IMG/VR virus record: IMGVR_UViG_3300026521_000003
Coordinates: 1 to 64,000 of that record
DNA: 64,000 nucleotides
Strand: one strand, 5' to 3'
The notes beneath the pieces were generated by a model. It ran no database searches. It had not been told where the DNA came from and saw only the letters and a list, made by a program, of their open reading frames with translations. This document shows, piece after piece, positions 4,449 through 63,478 of the stretch. The first letter of the stretch is position 1. Every line of letters starts with the position of its first letter. The position numbers were made by a program, and so were the translations under genes.

Positions 4449-5252
4449 ATGAGCAAATTAGAAGAATTGATTAATGAATTAACAGATGACGAACTTGAAT
4501 ATTTACAAGAAACCGTATTTACTGATGATGGCACAATTATATCAAAAAAAGAGTTTGAGAAGATATTGCATTATGAAACAACTATGGAATCACAACAGGA
4601 TGCAGTACAATTTGCTCTTAAAATCAATCTTAATAGTGTATATGGTGTTCAAATTATGCCACATTTTAAATTTGCTGATGAATGGCAAGCATTAGGCGCT
4701 TCAACTACTTTAACAGGAAGAATTTTATCAAAATATGGCCTTATTGAAACCATAGAGCAATTTTTTAATCCTGAAAGAGAAAGTAGATTTGAATTCCCAT
4801 TACTTGATAATATTATTGTTGCTGCAGATGATGATGAGTTCTTTGAAAATCCAGAATCACAAAAATTAAGAAGTGCAGTAATTTCCGATACTGATAGTGT
4901 AACAAAAGATGCAACTATCGAAACGGATTTATTCGGTGTTATTACATTTGGTGAATTAGAGTTAAAAGCATCACATGTTAAAACTGAAAATAATAAAGAG
5001 TATTTTTATTTTGATTCTCCTTTACAAGTAACGAATTACATAGATAATAAAGTAGTATTCGATGAAGTTCAATATCTATATGCACATAGAGTTGAGAAAG
5101 AAATTTTTGAAATAGAATTAGAGGATGGTAGTTCAATCAAGGTGACTGAAGACCACTCTATAATGATTTTGGATAAAAATGGAGAACCAACTATTAAAAA
5201 GAAACCATCAGAATTATCAGTAGATGATGTATGTATGGTTTATACTAAATAA
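4449..5252 (+). CDS. polB: Family B DNA polymerase (gp43-like) internal fragment fused to split-intein N-half
   Basis: Motif B KINLNSVYG and TLTGR, then motif C cut at SDTD, followed by intein-like SVTKDATIET...IKVTEDHSIM (block B TxxH). Confidence 0.92.
   Translation: MSKLEELINELTDDELEYLQETVFTDDGTIISKKEFEKILHYETTMESQQDAVQFALKINLNSVYGVQIMPHFKFADEWQALGASTTLTGRILSKYGLIETIEQFFNPERESRFEFPLLDNIIVAADDDEFFENPESQKLRSAVISDTDSVTKDATIETDLFGVITFGELELKASHVKTENNKEYFYFDSPLQVTNYIDNKVVFDEVQYLYAHRVEKEIFEIELEDGSSIKVTEDHSIMILDKNGEPTIKKKPSELSVDDVCMVYTK
4896..5249 (+). other. Split intein N-fragment (118 aa, Ser1)
   Basis: Begins with Ser right after DTD. Block B TEDH present. The ORF ends with no block F/G. Confidence 0.9.
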
Positions 5253-24474: not shown

Positions 24475-25428
24475 ATGGGTTATGGGTATTATTCTCGACG
24501 TTATTCATACGAAAGTCCTTCTCCCATAGAAATGTCAGATAATGACATAAATACATTAATCAATACTCTCAAAGAACAAATAGAAAATAATAAATTAAAA
24601 GATATAAGATCAACATTATCCAAATTGAAATTATCCACAAATGAAAAATATAAAGATTATGTTGGATTTAATGCTGTAATTTTAGCATACGTATATGCAT
24701 TAAAAATAGGCAGTAGTAAAACAATAAGTAGTTTGGAAAAAACTATTTTTAAAAAAAATTTTACAGTTGACGGGTTAAATATTTTATCACTTTCTAAGAT
24801 TCTAAAAAATGATTTTAAACTATTTATGGATCATTATCTAATAGATAAAAATACAATATACACAATAGATGATAATGAAACTATTACCTTTTTATTCTCA
24901 AATTATCCTACTGAAGCAGAAGTAATTATTAAAAATGGTAAAATTAGTAAATTTATAAAGGGCGAGGATAGATTAAATGTAATACTATCAATAATTAAGT
25001 ATTCTGAATTATTTGAGACTATTATAATCGGTTTAACAACTTTATATGGTACCGATTATGTAGATAAATTTTCAATCAAATATGACACTTTAAAAAAAAT
25101 CCACGATGAAATAATCTTAAAATCAAAACCTCTATTAAAGTCTCTCTTAAATGATTTTTATTATATTATTTATAAAGAATTTATAACTGCAGATATTTTA
25201 ATTTATGATTTAGAACATAAGTTGTTATTAGAAAATACACAAAAAAAATATATTGAATCTATATTAGATATAAGCGAAAAAAAACTTTTTGAATTATTAT
25301 ATCTGATTAAAAATCATGAATTACGTACTAATTTTATAGCTAATTCTGAAAAAGTATTATCATTAATTGTTAAAAATGGAGATCCCACACTTATACCTAA
25401 TGAAATAAAGGACATATTTCTTTTTTAA
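24475..25428 (+). CDS. Hypothetical protein
   Basis: 317-aa open ORF. Confidence 0.6.
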   Translation: MGYGYYSRRYSYESPSPIEMSDNDINTLINTLKEQIENNKLKDIRSTLSKLKLSTNEKYKDYVGFNAVILAYVYALKIGSSKTISSLEKTIFKKNFTVDGLNILSLSKILKNDFKLFMDHYLIDKNTIYTIDDNETITFLFSNYPTEAEVIIKNGKISKFIKGEDRLNVILSIIKYSELFETIIIGLTTLYGTDYVDKFSIKYDTLKKIHDEIILKSKPLLKSLLNDFYYIIYKEFITADILIYDLEHKLLLENTQKKYIESILDISEKKLFELLYLIKNHELRTNFIANSEKVLSLIVKNGDPTLIPNEIKDIFLF

Positions 25429-25478: not shown

Positions 25479-25601
25479 ATGACACTATCTCACAAAAAAA
25501 TAAAATCTATTAAAAAAGTTAAATATTATGACAAAGTATATGATATAACTATGAAGTCCAACCCACATACATTTTTTGCTAATAATATTTTAGTACATAA
25601 C
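25479..25601 (+). other. Split intein C-fragment (41 aa, basic), Ser+1 at 25602
   Basis: Block F VYDI and block G LVHN followed by Ser. Confidence 0.92.
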
Positions 25602-26633
25602 AGTTGCTATTTTAGAATAATGGAGGCAGAAAATTTGGAGGAAGCTCAAAAAATTGGTGCCGATGTTGTAAAAGCATGTGATGAAGGTAGTATTCCAATG
25701 TTGGTTAAAGATATTTTTAATGGTGATGATGTCATGAGATCCGATTTTGAAGCTATTGCCCGTTCAACATTATCATATGGTAAAAAGAAACAATATGCAT
25801 TTCTAAAAGGTTGGGAAGATGGTGAAGTACTTCCAAAGCCAAAATTAGGTATTACCGGTCTATCTATTAAAAGATCTGATTCACCCAAACAACTATCTAT
25901 GGAAATGAAACCGTTCTTTACTGAAATTATGAAAGGTTTAAAACATGAGCAAATCAAAGAAGCTATGGATAAAATTGAGTCGGATTATGATGATCTAAGC
26001 TTATATGATTTATCTGCAAAACGTTCAGCGAATAATTTAGGTAAATATTTAAAAGCATTCAATTATGAAATTGAATATAAATCTAGACCTTATAATATAG
26101 AAAAAATTGATGAATTTTTAAAAGAAGAGTACCCTGATATAAAAATTAAAATAAATGATAAAATATATTTTGATTTTATGAGAGAAGGTAGAGGTCGTTA
26201 TTCATTAGAAGATGGTGAATTAATAAAAGATGTTAATGGCGAAATTTATATTGAAGCAAAGGTAAAAATGGTTGTACCATTTCATATAAAGGCGTCTATT
26301 TTATATAACTATCTATTAGATGAATATAATTTATCATCCGAGTTTAATCAAATATTAAACGGTGAAAAAATTAAACTTTTTTATATTAAACCTACAAAAA
26401 TAAATATAAAATATACAAATAGTGATGGTGAAGTATTTGATATGATACAAGAATTTGATTGTATTGCATTCCCTTCTAGTTCTAAACACATACCATCATT
26501 TATTAATGATTTTACCCCAGATAAAAAGAGAATGCTAGAAACTTATTTCTTTGGTAAAATGGAAACTATTTTTGATGTTATTGGATTTAGCAAAGAAAAA
26601 CTTGAAAATATAGCTATGGATTCACTATTCTAA
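25479..26633 (+). CDS. polB: Split-intein C-half fused to family B DNA polymerase C-terminal part (palm/thumb)
   Basis: VYDITM...TFFANNILVHN|SCYF, then KKKQYA, GLSIKRSDSP, PFHIKASILYN, GEKIK. Confidence 0.92.
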   Translation: MTLSHKKIKSIKKVKYYDKVYDITMKSNPHTFFANNILVHNSCYFRIMEAENLEEAQKIGADVVKACDEGSIPMLVKDIFNGDDVMRSDFEAIARSTLSYGKKKQYAFLKGWEDGEVLPKPKLGITGLSIKRSDSPKQLSMEMKPFFTEIMKGLKHEQIKEAMDKIESDYDDLSLYDLSAKRSANNLGKYLKAFNYEIEYKSRPYNIEKIDEFLKEEYPDIKIKINDKIYFDFMREGRGRYSLEDGELIKDVNGEIYIEAKVKMVVPFHIKASILYNYLLDEYNLSSEFNQILNGEKIKLFYIKPTKINIKYTNSDGEVFDMIQEFDCIAFPSSSKHIPSFINDFTPDKKRMLETYFFGKMETIFDVIGFSKEKLENIAMDSLF

Positions 26634-57515: not shown

Positions 57516-59237
57516 TTAATATTTTTTTAAAATACGTCTTCCACTATCCGTATAAATTAAAAACCCATTCATTATCATATTTTCTTTAATTGTTAAATTT
57601 TCATCATACAAATCTATATATCCCATTATATTAGTATGATCTAAAGTATTATGGGAAATAAATATTTTTTCTTTATTATAATATAATGATTCTGATATTG
57701 ATCCTTCAAAACTAAAGTCAATCTTAAAAAATAAATCCAAATATAAATTAAATCTTCGGTCAATTGATATTATTATAGGCTTATCGGTCGATATTAAAAT
57801 ATCTATAAATGGATTAGTGTTAAAATTTATTTCTGGACATATTATAAAATGTTTAATTTCTATATTATTTTTATGATTAGAAATACCCATTACAGCTAAG
57901 AGTTCACCATTAAAAAATGCACCATACATTTTTATAAATGATAGGTTGATATTATACATATGTTTATTTAAAAAATCAAAACCTATGGAAGTATCAATTA
58001 TTTTGACTTCAAGCTCATTAATATCTAGGGTTTTTATTTTATATTTTAATTTATGGAGTATAATCTGTTTACAATAATCTTCATGATATTCCCATTCATA
58101 TTCATAAAATTGTATCAATGTTATATCTAAATTATCAGCGATTAGACTACTATCAATATAAGATGTATCCCTCGAAGTTGATGGTGACAAAATCTCTATA
58201 AATATATTTGATTTTAAGATTTCTATTTTATCCATATCTACTATCTTAAAGATATACCCTATTGAACTTAAAAAATCTTGGATTTTATTTAAAATATGTT
58301 TTCTATTATTTAATCTAGGATTACATTGAAAACAAACGGGTAAATTATTACTATCAATTAGACTTGTAATTATATTATTACATCTCTTACATTTAAATTT
58401 ATATTTATATTTGTTATCATATACCTGCAAATCATCAATACAAGTAACAAAAATATTATCTTTAAATTTTTCAAAAATTTTATTATTAAGGGTACTATCA
58501 ATTTTTGATAAGGATATAGGATTTTTTTGAGCAGAATAACTATCATATTTTGAAATAATTGTATTTTTACGTTTTTCTAAAATAGATTTATTCTTTATAG
58601 GAAATATAGTTCCGAATTTTTTTAAGTTTGTATTATATGCTTTTTTTCTAATATAATCTAATGATAAAGGGTGTTTAACACCATATTTAATCAAATTGGT
58701 AGTTATCGTTTTATTTCTAATTTCTTGAGATTGTTGTGCATATTCCACCCCATATTTCTCAATCATTGTCTTTTTTATTTTTTCTTTTGTACTATCTAAT
58801 TTTGCAATAGAATCAACACCATATTTTTCTTTAACCGTCTTTTTTATTTTTTCTTTTGTACTATCTAATTTTGCAATAGAATCAACACCATATTTTTCTT
58901 TAACCGTCTTTTTTAATTTCTTTTTTTGTTTTTCATTTTGTAAAGGGTGTTCTGTTCCATAATTTTTAAGAAATGTTATTTTTTGATTATGTTCTTTTGA
59001 ACATCCTAAATTAAATATATTAGTACGTTCATTAAATGAAGCATAATTTGAACAATTTTTAAATTGACATTTTGGAGGAGTATCTAGATCCCTTATCAAT
59101 AAATACCATTGGGCTTTTATAGATAAAGTTGGGTATCTCTCATTAAGATACCCAATAAGTTCTTTTGAAAAGTTTTTAAAATAAATATTTTTTTTAGTTT
59201 TATAATATTCAATTTCTTCTTTTAATTTAGTTTCCAT
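57516..59237 (-). CDS. Hef-like putative homing endonuclease with KYG repeats
   Basis: KKT..EKYGV repeats, CKRC...CFQC, C-terminal FL.K...YGAF...LLAVM...IDRRF...G.F...Y..G, typical of the Hef-like family in Campylobacter phages. Confidence 0.6.
   Translation of the reverse strand: METKLKEEIEYYKTKKNIYFKNFSKELIGYLNERYPTLSIKAQWYLLIRDLDTPPKCQFKNCSNYASFNERTNIFNLGCSKEHNQKITFLKNYGTEHPLQNEKQKKKLKKTVKEKYGVDSIAKLDSTKEKIKKTVKEKYGVDSIAKLDSTKEKIKKTMIEKYGVEYAQQSQEIRNKTITTNLIKYGVKHPLSLDYIRKKAYNTNLKKFGTIFPIKNKSILEKRKNTIISKYDSYSAQKNPISLSKIDSTLNNKIFEKFKDNIFVTCIDDLQVYDNKYKYKFKCKRCNNIITSLIDSNNLPVCFQCNPRLNNRKHILNKIQDFLSSIGYIFKIVDMDKIEILKSNIFIEILSPSTSRDTSYIDSSLIADNLDITLIQFYEYEWEYHEDYCKQIILHKLKYKIKTLDINELEVKIIDTSIGFDFLNKHMYNINLSFIKMYGAFFNGELLAVMGISNHKNNIEIKHFIICPEINFNTNPFIDILISTDKPIIISIDRRFNLYLDLFFKIDFSFEGSISESLYYNKEKIFISHNTLDHTNIMGYIDLYDENLTIKENMIMNGFLIYTDSGRRILKKY
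58768..58915. repeat. Perfect 69-bp tandem repeat (about 2.1 copies; 23 aa)
   Basis: KKTVKEKYGVDSIAKLDSTKEKI twice, identical at DNA level. Confidence 0.9.
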
Positions 59238-59243
59238 AACATA

Positions 59244-60476
59244 TTATTTTGTAGCTAGCCATTCTTTTCTAATTGATGCATTATCATCAAAAAATATTTG
59301 CATTAATTCATCTAAATGTCCTTGATCAGTAATATTAAAGGCATATTCATCCAAATTTGAAAATACATATTCCCAATCCGGCTTTTGCATAGATCCTAAT
59401 CCTTTAAAGTAATCAATTTTCCACGAATCATCAACCGCACCAGATTCTTTAGCTTCATCAAATTCATGTCTATTTGAATAATATAATACTTTTTTACCTT
59501 TTTTTGCAGCAATCATAGGAAATACAATTCTATTAATAAATGGGTTTTCATGATCCCAAAATAGTTCTGGGAAATATTCATGGAATAAATTAACAACAAG
59601 ATTATTAATAGCACTTCCATCTGGATCAGCATCAGTTGCTATATAAATTTTTGAATATTTCAATTTCGTATCAAAAGCAGGACGTAACCATTTATGAAAT
59701 CTAACTAATTTAGCAGTAGAATCAGCTTTTTTAATCTCTATACTTTGTGTTGTTTTTGGCATTTTTTTAAGTAACATAGACACTTTATGCCATTTTTTAT
59801 CAATATATACTTCATCGATGTCATTGCAAATTAATGTCGTTCTACCTATTTTAACTTCGTATTTAACACCATTTTTTCTAAATCCTCTAAATTCCCATTT
59901 TCTTCTAAAATGAAAATAATCTGGGGCTGAAAGATCAGAAATTGTAGCGTCACTTGTTTCTATTTTTTGAATATATCCACGATATAGTGTTTCATTATTT
60001 ACCAACTCACCAATACTAACCCATTTTTTATTTAAGTGGAATTTATCTTCTGAGCTAACAATTACTGTTTTGATTATAGGTTCACCTTCTTTATCAACTT
60101 CAAAAATACTTTCAAAAGTTACCTCATATATATTCACATTATCACTAATCACCCAATCACCCATTTGTTCATTAAACTCAAGATTTATTGCTGTAATTAT
60201 ATCAGCTACTTCATCATTATTCATTGCATCTATTGGTGCTTTACCATAAACATTTAAAACTTTACCTTTTAATGGCATCCCTGCTTGTGTCTCTGGATCC
60301 CTAATCTCAGTAAATGAAGCTATTGCAGAATTATGTGTTAATAATCCATTTTCAAGAATAAATGTTTCATTATCTTCTACTTGTATATCATTCATATTAA
60401 TGACTTTATTAGTACTATAAACACTATTAATTTCTACCATATCAAATTCATCAATATTTATTTCATTCAATTGCAT
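59244..60476 (-). CDS. Split-intein C-half fused to type II topoisomerase TOPRIM fragment (gp39/gp60, GyrB C-terminal-like)
   Basis: NDIQVEDNETFILENGLLTHN|SAIA (the SA of EGDSA), PLKGKVLNV, IATDADPDG, YFKGLGS. Confidence 0.9.
   Translation of the reverse strand: MQLNEINIDEFDMVEINSVYSTNKVINMNDIQVEDNETFILENGLLTHNSAIASFTEIRDPETQAGMPLKGKVLNVYGKAPIDAMNNDEVADIITAINLEFNEQMGDWVISDNVNIYEVTFESIFEVDKEGEPIIKTVIVSSEDKFHLNKKWVSIGELVNNETLYRGYIQKIETSDATISDLSAPDYFHFRRKWEFRGFRKNGVKYEVKIGRTTLICNDIDEVYIDKKWHKVSMLLKKMPKTTQSIEIKKADSTAKLVRFHKWLRPAFDTKLKYSKIYIATDADPDGSAINNLVVNLFHEYFPELFWDHENPFINRIVFPMIAAKKGKKVLYYSNRHEFDEAKESGAVDDSWKIDYFKGLGSMQKPDWEYVFSNLDEYAFNITDQGHLDELMQIFFDDNASIRKEWLATK
60330..60476 (-). other. 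Split intein C-fragment (49 aa, acidic), Ser+1 at 60329-60327
   Basis: Block F DIQV...TF and block G LTHN followed by Ser. Confidence 0.88.
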
Positions 60477-60545
60477 TTAATCTCCTTATATTATACTTTA
60501 TTTTACAATTTTTTATTTTATTATATTATAAAGAAATCAATTTAT

Positions 60546-61094
60546 CTAATTAATTTCTCTAGTAGAATGTATTTTTATTAATTCATCAGGATATTCTTCT
60601 TTGAAGATATTATAAAGTGATTCGAATTTTTTATAATTTGAATCATATATCAATGTAAATTCTTTAGAATTATAATTTATAGATTTATGAGTAGTAAATA
60701 CCAATCTAATAAAATCTAATAATACTTTGTTAATATCATTATTTACAATTTTATTAGTATCAGATAAAATGATGATTTCTTTATTTCGATCTTCATAAAC
60801 AATTAATTCAATATCATATCCTATTTCTAAAGTCAAATTCAATATATATTTTCTAATAATATTAGTGATACCTAAATTGTTAGTTAATACTTTATCAGAA
60901 TTCATTATACTGTCTGGCATTAGTGTATAATGTGTAATTGTAGTTTTTATAGGTTCTATGATAGTTTCAATTTTATATTGGTTCTCAAACCAATCAAATG
61001 ACGGTATAAGAGAAGCGTAGTAAACGTCTTGACCTATACCAAAATAATGTTTTAAGACACCAATAGATTTAAGGTTCTTATTACTGTACATCAC
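60546..61094 (-). CDS. Hypothetical protein
   Basis: Open ORF. Confidence 0.55.
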   Translation of the reverse strand: MMYSNKNLKSIGVLKHYFGIGQDVYYASLIPSFDWFENQYKIETIIEPIKTTITHYTLMPDSIMNSDKVLTNNLGITNIIRKYILNLTLEIGYDIELIVYEDRNKEIIILSDTNKIVNNDINKVLLDFIRLVFTTHKSINYNSKEFTLIYDSNYKKFESLYNIFKEEYPDELIKIHSTREIN

Positions 61095-63247: not shown

Positions 63248-63478
63248 CTATTCTTGAATTAATAGATGATCAATTTGTATTTTTAAATCTTCCATCTTTT
63301 TCATAGTTAATTCTTTAGTTTTAGAATCCCATACACCCCATAAATGCGACGGTGATGATTTGACTATCCGATCTGATGTTTTAAATACATACTTATAAAC
63401 TCTTTCTTCTGGTTTAAATTCAATATCTAATATTGGTAGGGTCTTAAAGATTCTACCATCATCTAATTTAGTAATCAT
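63248..63478 (-). CDS. Free-standing HINT/intein-like fragment
   Basis: VYKYVFKTSDRIVKSSPSHLWGV...KKMEDLKI..D resembles intein block B and the following strands; no block A or G. Confidence 0.5.
   Translation of the reverse strand: MITKLDDGRIFKTLPILDIEFKPEERVYKYVFKTSDRIVKSSPSHLWGVWDSKTKELTMKKMEDLKIQIDHLLIQE

What the first reader, a model, noticed from the sequence alone, without database searches (positions are those of the whole stretch)
59244..60476. Second split intein, in type II topoisomerase at the EGD|SA motif, with reversed charge
Seen: the ORF starts with a 49-aa IntC (THN|S) followed by SAIA...PLKGKVLNV. The ATPase domain and EGD-IntN part are not in the window. This IntC has 10 Asp/Glu and 1 Lys, whereas the PolB IntC has 8 Lys and 2 Asp. 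Established: split-intein halves associate electrostatically, usually acidic IntN with basic IntC. Inference: charge inversion keeps two co-expressed split inteins orthogonal and prevents polymerase-topoisomerase chimeras.
Basis: partly seen in the sequence, partly recalled or inferred. Interest (0 to 1): 0.75.

Follow-up and report, generated by a model that had tools for sequence, protein, structure and literature searches.

The report
Split intein in phage topoisomerase II
A large phage from a hydrothermal-vent metagenome encodes its topoisomerase II large subunit as two genes 116 kb apart that almost certainly rejoin by a naturally split intein; this host gene and site appear undescribed for a split intein, but the "reversed charge" is an inherited, already known trait and the partner half is not basic.

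Summary
ORF 59244-60476(-) starts with a 49-aa C-intein (…THN|S, net charge -9), followed by the Toprim and C-terminal part of a phage topoisomerase II large subunit.

I found the missing partner on the same 289,880-bp viral contig at 176,790-178,421(+). It is a GHKL ATPase plus transducer ending …EGD|C, followed by a 95-aa N-intein. Against an unsplit phage enzyme the two exteins abut exactly at EGD|SA.

Cys1, the block-B His, the terminal His-Asn and Ser+1 are invariant or nearly so across about 57-59 related clusters. A complex model supports binding of the two halves (0.83, best control 0.01). Independent metagenomes reproduce the gene start.

- The N-intein is not basic. Its net charge is -4, the proteome average (family mean -1.6). 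Only a short conserved tail, HKLL[KR]KK, is basic.
- An acidic C-intein is inherited across this whole intein family.
- N(+)/C(-) polarity has been known for gp41-1 since 2009.
- The genome carries at least five split-intein pieces, and three of the four C-inteins are acidic. A two-state charge code cannot separate them.

Verdict: a new member of a known kind, of moderate interest.

The parts
60330..60476 (-). C-intein (IntC), 49 aa, ending …L-T-H-N. Net charge -9.
   Evidence: TIGR01443 hit at 27.1 bits, above cut-off. D30, H48 and N49 are invariant in alignments A1-A3. In the complex model, residues 1, 3, 5-8 and 10-50 of this chain contact the N-intein piece. Charge.
60327..60329 (-). Ser+1 codon, the first residue of the C-extein. 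It is the Ser of the Toprim EGD-S-A motif.
   Evidence: Alignment to the unsplit Atu_ph07 topo II large subunit: N-extein ends …EGD and C-extein starts SAIA, with no residue missing or duplicated. S50 is invariant or nearly so.
60183..60326 (-). First part of the C-extein Toprim domain (AIASF…PLKGKVLNV…AINLE).
   Evidence: 37% identity to Atu_ph07 residues 411-460. Invariant P68, L69, G71, K72, N75.
59658..60182 (-). Clade-specific insertion of about 175 aa in the Toprim domain, all-beta with an internal repeat. It may be a degenerate HINT-like domain.
   Evidence: Absent from unsplit phage topo II and from the ~240-aa split C-halves. Conserved in 48 sequences. AF2 pLDDT 90.5. VIA-align: second half matches T4 topo II 8yo3_C at Z 7.1; first half matches about 20 inteins at Z 2.3-4.8. 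Nearest atlas shapes are HINT clusters, TM 0.35-0.43. No significant Foldseek match.
59247..59657 (-). Rest of Toprim (D-x-D-x-D-G metal site) and the TOPRIM_C tail; the stop codon is at 59244-59246.
   Evidence: Pfam Toprim 269-302 and TOPRIM_C 318-408. phrog_543, topo II large subunit. Foldseek top hits are T4 topoisomerase II 8yo3/8yo4, E 1e-13.
60482..60507 (-). Own translation and transcription signals of the C-half: AAGGAG 5 nt before the ATG, and the motif TGTAAAATA…GTATAAT.
   Evidence: Sequence read directly. The motif occurs only twice in the 290-kb genome, upstream of the two topo II halves.
57516..59237 (-). Free-standing homing-endonuclease-like gene (DUF7487, 573 aa) directly downstream of the C-half.
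   Evidence: Pfam DUF7487, 3e-29. PHROG homing endonuclease. Full-length homolog of the ORF lying between the TerL halves. Syntenic in relatives. The nuclease motif present in the ortholog appears lost here.
4896..5249 (+). PolB N-intein (118 aa, starts with Ser after …DTD, net -11).
   Evidence: TIGR01445 at 42.7 bits. Pfam DNA_pol_B and Intein_splicing. Charge.
25479..25601 (+). PolB C-intein (41 aa, …VHN|S, net +6).
   Evidence: TIGR01443 at 26 bits. PHROG DNA polymerase for the extein. Charge.

Best explanation
The gene is the C-terminal half of a phage type IIA topoisomerase large subunit (T4 gp39/GyrB-like) that is broken by a naturally split class-1 intein. The break lies inside the catalytic Toprim motif, between EGD and SA.

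The N-half lies 116 kb away on the other strand. It consists of the GHKL ATPase, the transducer, …EGD and a 95-aa N-intein. The C-half consists of a 49-aa C-intein, Ser+1, and the rest of Toprim and the tail. Each half has its own ribosome-binding site, and both share a promoter-like motif.

Inferred mechanism: after translation the two intein pieces bind and fold into one HINT domain. Cys1, the block-B His, the terminal His-Asn and Ser+1 then carry out trans-splicing. This joins EGD to SAIA and yields an 809-aa subunit with an intact Glu/DxD active site.

Association probably starts between the conserved basic tail of the N-intein (HKLL[KR]KK) and the acidic head of the C-intein. That is the gp41-1-type local polarity. 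Otherwise both pieces are acidic.

Shown here: the anatomy, the exact junction, conservation, the partner, the predicted binding and independent assemblies. Inferred: splicing activity, co-expression and the role of the charges.
For: - Partner: found at G000 176,790-178,421(+), with HATPase_c and DNA_gyraseB domains and ending EGD|C….
- One protein: the two halves map to consecutive parts of one PHROG profile, positions 20-445 and 504-638 of 661.
- Junction: they abut exactly on unsplit Atu_ph07 topo II.
- Intein signature: the C-terminal model scores above its cut-off.
- Conservation: Cys1, Ser59 and His62 are 59/59 in N-halves. D30, H48 and N49 are invariant in C-halves.
- Spread: 57 C-half and ~59 N-half clusters at 90% identity share the same architecture.
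- Contiguous allele: a mini-intein at the same EG[DN]|SA site in an unsplit 797-aa enzyme matches the N-intein (38%) and the C-intein plus extein (50%).
- Nearest solved relative: the gp41-1 intein 6QAZ.
- Complex model: ipSAE 0.83, best of 3 controls 0.01. That mark was reached by 51 of 78 solved complexes and 2 of 108 mismatched pairs.
- Conserved arrangement: in an NCBI 496-kb contig the halves are also ~116 kb apart on opposite strands, with the same neighbours.
- Expression signals: SD sequence and shared upstream motif.
- Independent data: DNA contigs are identical across the gene start, and RNA-library contigs cover 60127-60398.
Against: - No splicing assay exists.
- The high complex score may come from the model's memory of solved inteins (caveat stated).
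- Intein N-terminal models (TIGR01445, PF14890) did not detect this N-intein.
- The GyrA/gp52-like partner subunit was not found in this 87%-complete record, so a complete enzyme is not demonstrated.
- Both fragments are net acidic, which departs from the usual charge segregation and could mean weak association.
- RNA-library contigs do not prove transcription, because DNA carry-over is possible.
Confidence: 0.85

Rival explanations
1. The charge polarity of the topo II split intein is inverted (basic N-intein, acidic C-intein) relative to the PolB split intein. This inversion is what keeps the two co-expressed pairs orthogonal and prevents polymerase-topoisomerase chimeras.
For: - The C-inteins do have opposite charges: -9 for topo II and +6 for PolB.
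- The PolB N-intein is strongly acidic (-11), so pairing of the PolB N-intein with the topo II C-intein should be disfavoured.
- The topo II N-intein has a conserved basic tail (+3.0 on average) facing an acidic C-intein head.
- Charge engineering made NpuDnaB halves orthogonal (bioRxiv 10.1101/546465).
Against: - The topo II N-intein is net -4, the proteome average, and the family mean is -1.6.
- The reciprocal cross-pair, topo II N-intein (-4) with PolB C-intein (+6), is not electrostatically excluded.
- An acidic C-intein is ancestral to the whole intein family, whatever the genome.
- Three of the four C-inteins in this genome are acidic.
- The polarity has been known since 2009.
- A local swap of three charged residues per half left NpuDnaE cross-reactive, although the same paper cites a whole-fragment swap that did suppress cross-reactivity.
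- 15 of 16 unrelated split inteins are orthogonal anyway.
- The two inteins share only ~20-30% identity where they can be aligned.
Confidence: 0.12
2. The intein pieces act only as non-covalent docking domains. The two topo II fragments assemble without peptide ligation, as in the T4 gp39/gp60 split or the fragmented Aeh1 ribonucleotide reductase.
For: - Precedent exists for assembly of a phage enzyme fragmented by a mobile element through interaction domains (PMC3045599, listed).
- From memory: T4 topo II works as separate gp39, gp60 and gp52 chains.
- No splicing data exist here.
Against: - Every catalytic residue of a class-1 intein is invariant across dozens of diverged sequences. That is not expected if only docking were selected.
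- The break lies inside the catalytic EGD-SA strand, where about 144 extra residues would disrupt the active site.
Confidence: 0.08
3. The split is an artefact or a decaying pseudogene: a mis-assembly, or a dead remnant of a once contiguous intein-containing gene.
For: - The record is a metagenomic, linear, 87%-complete contig.
- No GyrA-like subunit was found.
- The neighbouring homing-endonuclease-like gene looks degenerate.
Against: - Independent runs from other studies give the same sequence.
- Relatives at 48-82% identity keep the same architecture with full-length open frames.
- The 116-kb arrangement is conserved in another assembly.
- The gene has a strong SD sequence.
Confidence: 0.03

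Closest known systems
gp41-1 naturally split intein (metagenomic cyanophage-like helicase; PDB 6QAZ; Dassa et al. 2009, PMC2677866; Beyer et al. 2019, bioRxiv 10.1101/546465)
   Same: - Phage origin, canonical split site, Cys1 and Ser+1, and a …ILTHN end.
- C-intein dominated by negative charge.
- It is the nearest solved structure to the topo II N-intein (E 0.006).
- This genome also carries a gp41-1-like C-intein in a primase/helicase gene, matching the topo II C-intein at 18 of 36 aligned positions.
   Different: - The host protein is topoisomerase II, not a helicase.
- The N-intein here is net acidic with only a short basic tail. Where gp41-1 has the Lys-rich stretch KSKKKSYK, this N-intein reads VEKEEYII.
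- The halves lie 116 kb apart on opposite strands, not flanking a homing endonuclease gene.
Classical bacterial GyrB intein (Ssp GyrB type)
   Same: Same enzyme family and the same Toprim loop. The intein ends in …FVHN|SA.
   Different: It is contiguous and sits at …EGDSAGG|SAKQGR, four residues downstream of EGD|SA. Its sequence family differs (CFSGDT… start).
Contiguous mini-intein at EG[DN]|SA in an unsplit metagenomic topo II/GyrB (P0257, 797 aa)
   Same: Identical insertion site and homologous intein ends: 38% to the N-intein, 50% to the C-intein plus extein.
   Different: It is a single polypeptide and so cis-splicing. It is unnamed and, as far as the searched literature shows, undescribed.
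Fractured genes (Dassa et al. 2009): split-intein halves separated by a free-standing homing endonuclease gene
   Same: A DUF7487-type homing-endonuclease-like gene sits next to the C-half. It is homologous to the one lying between the TerL halves of this genome.
   Different: Here that gene lies downstream of the C-half, not between the halves, and the halves are 116 kb apart and inverted. Topoisomerase is not among the hosts in that paper (0 occurrences).
Aes123 PolB1 cysteine-less split intein (PMC11923092)
   Same: It is the comparison element. The window's PolB split intein uses Ser1 and Ser+1, with an N-piece of ~118 aa and a C-piece of 41 aa, and has acidic-N/basic-C polarity.
   Different: It belongs to a different intein family from the topo II intein, with 13/40 and 17/81 identities.
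T4 gene 39 / gene 60 split of topoisomerase II (from memory, not tested here)
   Same: A phage topo II large subunit encoded in separate genes. The T4 break lies in the same Toprim loop that carries the 175-aa insertion here.
   Different: T4 has no intein and its pieces stay separate chains. Here the break is at EGD|SA and intein-mediated ligation is expected.

Membership tests
Class-1 intein (HINT domain) | N-terminal nucleophile (Cys/Ser) as the first intein residue, directly after the N-extein | tested here: met
   …EGD|C in the N-half. Cys1 is present in 59/59 family members.
Class-1 intein (HINT domain) | Block B motif (T/S-x-x-H) | tested here: met
   S59-K-N-H62. Ser59 and His62 are each 59/59.
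Class-1 intein (HINT domain) | Blocks F/G with a penultimate His and terminal Asn, followed by a Ser/Cys/Thr +1 residue | tested here: met
   …DIQVEDNETF…LTHN|S. TIGR01443 scores 27.1 bits against a 15.6-bit cut-off. D30, H48 and N49 are invariant and S50 is at least 90% conserved.
Class-1 intein (HINT domain) | In-frame insertion: exteins are colinear with uninterrupted homologs, with no residue lost or gained | tested here: met
   Atu_ph07 topo II: N-extein aligns up to EGD (residue 410) and C-extein from S411.
Naturally split intein | N- and C-intein pieces encoded by separate genes with their own start signals | tested here: met
   The genes lie at 176,790-178,421(+) and 59,244-60,476(-). 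Each has an SD sequence and a stop codon. The gene start is confirmed in independent assemblies, and the 116-kb arrangement recurs in a relative's assembly.
Naturally split intein | The two pieces associate into one HINT fold | tested here: inconclusive
   Prediction only: ipSAE 0.83, best control 0.01 (mark reached by 51/78 solved complexes and 2/108 mismatched pairs). The score may reflect the model's memory of solved inteins.
Naturally split intein | Protein trans-splicing activity (a ligated extein product) | not testable with these tools
   Needs co-expression and detection of the 809-aa product or the EGD-SAIA junction peptide.
gp41-1-type charge polarity (N-intein positive, C-intein negative) | C-intein carries net negative charge | tested here: met
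   Net -9 here. The family mean is -7.3, and the wider family averages about -9.
gp41-1-type charge polarity (N-intein positive, C-intein negative) | N-intein, or its interface strand, carries net positive charge | tested here: inconclusive
   The whole N-intein is net -4 and the family mean is -1.6, so the feature is not met globally. The conserved C-terminal tail is +3 while the body is -5 to -7. No atomic contacts are available to say which strand faces the C-intein.
Fractured-gene arrangement (Dassa 2009) | A homing endonuclease gene lies between the two adjacent halves | tested here: not met
   The endonuclease-like ORF 57516-59237 lies downstream of the C-half, and the N-half is 116 kb away on the other strand. 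The TerL locus of the same genome does meet this feature.
Classical bacterial GyrB intein allele | Insertion at SAGG|SAKQGR | tested here: not met
   The site here is EGD|SA, four residues upstream. Metagenomic cis GyrB inteins show …EGDSAGG|CFSGDT…FVHN|SAKQGR.

The most novel reading that the evidence does not exclude
This is a distinct assembly mode for split inteins. Both fragments are acidic, and recognition rests on a short conserved basic tail (HKLL[KR]KK) docking onto the acidic head of the C-intein. In a phage that runs at least four or five split inteins at once (PolB, topo II, primase/helicase, two in TerL), such short local codes, rather than global charge, would provide natural mutual orthogonality. 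In addition, the same gene may carry a domesticated, non-splicing HINT-like insertion in the Toprim loop.
Probability: 0.2. Interest if true: 0.6.

Novelty: new member of a known kind. Interest (0 to 1): 0.45.

Why it matters
Naturally split inteins are rare, and they are the workhorses of protein ligation. I found no description of one in a type II topoisomerase in the searched literature.

This family is large. It spans dozens of 50%-identity clusters, with both split and contiguous alleles at one site, and it uses the useful Cys1/Ser+1 chemistry.

One phage genome with at least five split-intein pieces in four essential genes is a ready-made natural test set for how co-resident split inteins avoid cross-reaction.

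The result also corrects a tempting rule. Whole-fragment charge does not predict the partner here, because the N-intein is acidic like its C-intein.

Tried and rejected
- **N-half in related IMG/VR records.** I searched three records that carry the C-half (50-85% complete) with the protein and with PF00204. Nothing was found. These are fragments, so the result is uninformative. The NCBI 496-kb contig settled the arrangement instead.
- **Wider N-intein family.** A word-based search with the N-intein region alone gave only 3 hits, so N-intein charges outside the clade remain unknown, apart from L010 (net -6).
- **Other enzyme parts in the own genome.** No match for DnaB_C, DNA_topoisoIV or the PolB exonuclease domain. 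tblastn with two gp52-like proteins gave only a spurious hit in a tail-fibre-like repeat protein. The GyrA-like subunit, the helicase N-half and the PolB N-terminus are therefore not in this 87%-complete record.
- **Fold of the Toprim insertion.** Foldseek against PDB and AFDB found nothing significant. Only weak but recurrent HINT matches came from VIA-align and the atlas.
- **False intein hits.** PF14890 hits at 252,260 and 254,830 are false positives in a paralog family.
Full report
**Source and setting.** The window is the first 64 kb of a 289,880-bp linear viral record, 87% complete by CheckV. The DNA is held by hydrothermal-vent, epibiont and biofilm metagenomes from several studies.

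**Observation.**
- ORF 59244-60476(-) encodes 410 aa. Residues 1-49 end in L-T-H-N and are followed by S-A-I-A…PLKGKVLNV.
- The intein C-terminal model TIGR01443 matches 60327-60389(-) at 27.1 bits, above its 15.6-bit cut-off.
- Pfam finds only Toprim (269-302) and TOPRIM_C (318-408). PHROGs names the protein DNA topoisomerase II large subunit.
The topo II C-intein has 4 D, 6 E and 1 K, net -9. The PolB C-intein has 8 K and 2 D, net +6.
- An AAGGAG Shine-Dalgarno sequence lies 5 nt before the ATG.
- Contigs from two other studies are identical over 59895-60800 and 60014-60800, bridging the gene start. Contigs from two RNA libraries cover parts of the gene, including 60127-60398. The feature is real.

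**The partner.**
- PF00204 finds one place in the genome, inside a 543-aa ORF at 176,790-178,421(+). It has HATPase_c and DNA_gyraseB domains and ends …AFSEGD, followed by a 95-aa tail that starts with Cys.
- The N-half matches PHROG 543 at profile positions 20-445, and the C-half at 504-638.
- Against the unsplit 604-aa topo II large subunit of Agrobacterium phage Atu_ph07, the N-half aligns up to …EGD and the C-extein from SAIA…. Nothing is missing or duplicated.
- The gene is therefore broken exactly at EGD|SA, inside the catalytic Toprim motif. The pieces lie 116 kb apart on opposite strands. The spliced product would be 448 + 361 = 809 aa.

**Is it a working intein?**
- A clade of 57 C-half clusters (48-77% identity) and about 59 N-half clusters (58-82%) keeps the same architecture.
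- Cys1, Ser59 and His62 (block B) are 59/59. D30, H48 and N49 are invariant and Ser+1 nearly so.
- The nearest solved structure to the N-intein is the gp41-1 split intein, 6QAZ, E 0.006.
- An unsplit 797-aa metagenomic enzyme carries a contiguous ~155-aa mini-intein at the same EG[DN]|SA site. Its two ends match the N-intein (38%) and the C-intein plus extein (50%).
- A complex model of the two pieces gave ipSAE 0.83, with the best of 3 controls at 0.01. That mark was reached by 51 of 78 solved complexes and 2 of 108 mismatched pairs. Nearly all C-intein residues are in the interface, as expected for an intertwined HINT fold. The score may partly be the model's memory of solved inteins.
- Alone, the C-intein is modelled as disordered, with pLDDT about 50-60.
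- Splicing itself is inferred, not shown.

**Arrangement and history.**
- In an NCBI 496-kb contig the orthologous halves are again about 116 kb apart on opposite strands. The neighbours are the same: ClpP, a 179-aa ORF, the C-half, DUF7487, then a long tail-fibre-like gene.
- In a more distant phage the N-half (with a 164-aa N-intein), a 240-aa C-half and the gp52-like subunit are adjacent genes. Adjacency is therefore probably ancestral and the long-range separation derived.
- Directly downstream of the C-half lies a 573-aa homing-endonuclease-like gene (DUF7487, PHROG 3339). It is syntenic in relatives at only 35% identity. Here it appears to lack the nuclease core motif present in the ortholog.
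- That gene is a full-length homolog of the ORF lying between the two TerL halves of this genome.
- Both topo II halves are preceded by TGTAAAATA-N(0-3)-GTATA..AT. This pattern occurs only twice in the genome, at these two genes, which suggests co-regulation. That is an inference.

**Spread of the family.** A profile of the C-intein plus 50 extein residues, searched against 1.8 billion representatives, found 625 proteins. Among the best 150:
- About 70 begin with a homologous C-intein at their N-terminus. Many are ~240 aa, that is, C-halves without the insertion.
- Contiguous inteins occur at three neighbouring sites in the Toprim motif: |CEGD, EGD|SA, and the classical bacterial GyrB site SAGG|SAKQ.

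EGD|SA is thus a recurrent intein site with both cis and split alleles.

**Charges.**

| Piece | Net charge | Source |
|---|---|---|
| Topo II C-intein, this phage | -9 | |
| Topo II C-intein, clade | mean -7.3, range -2 to -11 | |
| Topo II/GyrB C-intein, wider family | about -9 | |
| Topo II N-intein, this phage | -4 (11 K, 1 R, 4 D, 12 E) | |
| Topo II N-intein, family | mean -1.6, range -9 to +8 | |
| N-intein tail, from the conserved His of HKLL[KR]KK | +3.0 on average, range +1 to +5 | |
| N-intein body | -5 on average | |
| C-intein head | -3.1 on average | |

- The N-intein's -4 equals the average of all 95-aa windows of this acidic proteome, -4.1.
- Beyer et al. place the gp41-1 charge network between β6, at the start of the C-intein, and β3, in the C-end region of the N-intein. 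The basic-tail/acidic-head pairing fits that local polarity.
- Where gp41-1 has KSKKKSYK, this N-intein reads VEKEEYII.

**Orthogonality.**
- A local swap of three charged residues per half left NpuDnaE cross-reactive with the wild-type C-piece, although a similar change sufficed in an engineered NpuDnaB mini-intein. The same paper cites an earlier whole-fragment charge swap of NpuDnaE that did suppress cross-reactivity.
- 15 of 16 unrelated split inteins were mutually orthogonal.
- This genome has more than two split inteins:
  - PolB: N-piece -11, C-piece +6.
  - Topo II: -4, -9.
  - A gp41-1-like C-intein (-6) on a primase/helicase fragment.
  - TerL-1: an atypical split with a 33-aa N-piece (-2) and a 112-aa C-piece (-12).
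  - A second short N-piece (41 aa, -5) at the end of the TerL middle fragment.
- Three of the four C-inteins are acidic, so a two-state charge code cannot separate them.
- The topo II and PolB inteins are only ~20-30% identical where alignable, which by itself predicts orthogonality.
- Charge repulsion may help against one cross-pair (PolB N-piece with topo II C-piece). It does not exclude the reciprocal pair.

**Insertion in Toprim.**
- Residues ~99-273 have no counterpart in unsplit phage topo II or in the 240-aa C-halves. They are conserved across the clade, with invariant PDYFHFRR…RGFR.
- They are modelled confidently as an all-beta domain, pLDDT 90.5.
- Foldseek finds nothing significant.
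- VIA-align matches the second half to T4 topo II (8yo3_C, Z 7.1, 25% identity). The first half matches about 20 inteins among the top 50, at Z 2.3-4.8.
- The nearest shapes in the ESM Atlas are mostly HINT-domain clusters, TM 0.35-0.43.
- This hints at a degenerate, non-splicing HINT-like insertion. The scores are below the usual thresholds.

**Literature.** Full-text searches for a split intein in a topoisomerase or gyrase found none. GyrB cis-inteins are known.

**Caveats.**
- No GyrA/gp52-like subunit, helicase N-half, PolB N-terminus or TerL C-piece was found in this incomplete record.
- Cross-pair modelling could not be run.

**Verdict.** This is a genuine, conserved, naturally split class-1 intein in a new host gene and site, so a new member of a known kind. 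The charge-inversion story is at best a local, inherited feature. It is not a demonstrated orthogonality device.

Noticed in passing
G000 (own genome) 225495-226100(+), outside the window: A third split-intein piece. A 37-aa acidic C-intein (…ILTHN|S, net -6), very like gp41-1, heads a 201-aa primase/helicase fragment (phrog_239). Its N-half was not found in the record.
   Followed up: partly
G000 275194-280170(+), outside the window: The terminase large subunit is in at least three pieces with two atypically split inteins. The N-piece ends in a 33-aa N-intein. A 711-aa DUF7487 homing-endonuclease-like ORF and a 435-aa ORF follow. The middle piece then starts with a 112-aa C-intein (…SHN|CDEMAF) and ends in another 41-aa N-intein whose partner is not in the record. 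This resembles the AceL-TerL type.
   Followed up: partly
window 4449-5252(+) and 25479-26633(+): [quoted passage not shown] Its halves are 20 kb apart. The PolB N-terminal (exonuclease) part was not found anywhere in the record.
   Followed up: partly
window 59658-60182(-): A clade-specific, all-beta insertion of ~175 aa in the Toprim domain, with an internal repeat and an invariant PDYFHFRR…RGFR motif. Weak but recurrent structural similarity to HINT/intein folds; the second half resembles a region of T4 topo II (Z 7.1).
   Followed up: partly
window 63248-63478(-): A 76-aa ORF that matches the topo II N-intein family HMM (E 1.4e-4) but lacks Cys1. It may be an orphan, degenerate N-intein-like fragment, 2.8 kb upstream of the C-half on the same strand.
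   Followed up: no
window 24475-25428(+); G000 236768-283565: 37 ORFs of at least 100 aa end in a near-identical C-terminal motif, …(F)LPxE[VI]K[DS][IL]F[IVL][FY]. Most are in tandem between 237 and 274 kb; one lies just upstream of the PolB C-half. This is a large paralog family with a conserved tail of unknown role.
   Followed up: no
window 60488-60507(-) and G000 176752-176769(+): The motif TGTAAAATA-N(0-3)-GTATA..AT occurs only twice in 290 kb, immediately upstream of the two topo II halves. It may be a shared promoter or operator.
   Followed up: partly
window 57516-59237(-): The homing-endonuclease-like gene next to the C-half is syntenic in relatives. It appears to have lost the nuclease core motif (NG.FWHSE-like) that its ortholog in L007 keeps.
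   Followed up: partly
L009:3476-5683(+): A 67-kb phage carries a contiguous mini-intein at the terminase P-loop (GK|C…SHN|S). Its C-terminal block (…MIDIQVEDNENFFANGIVSHN) closely resembles the topo II C-intein, which suggests this intein family moves between phage genes.
   Followed up: no
proteins P0250-P0369: Metagenomic GyrB/topo II proteins show three adjacent intein insertion sites within the Toprim motif: |CEGD, EGD|SA and SAGG|SAKQ. Some inteins at EGD| start with Ala.
   Followed up: partly
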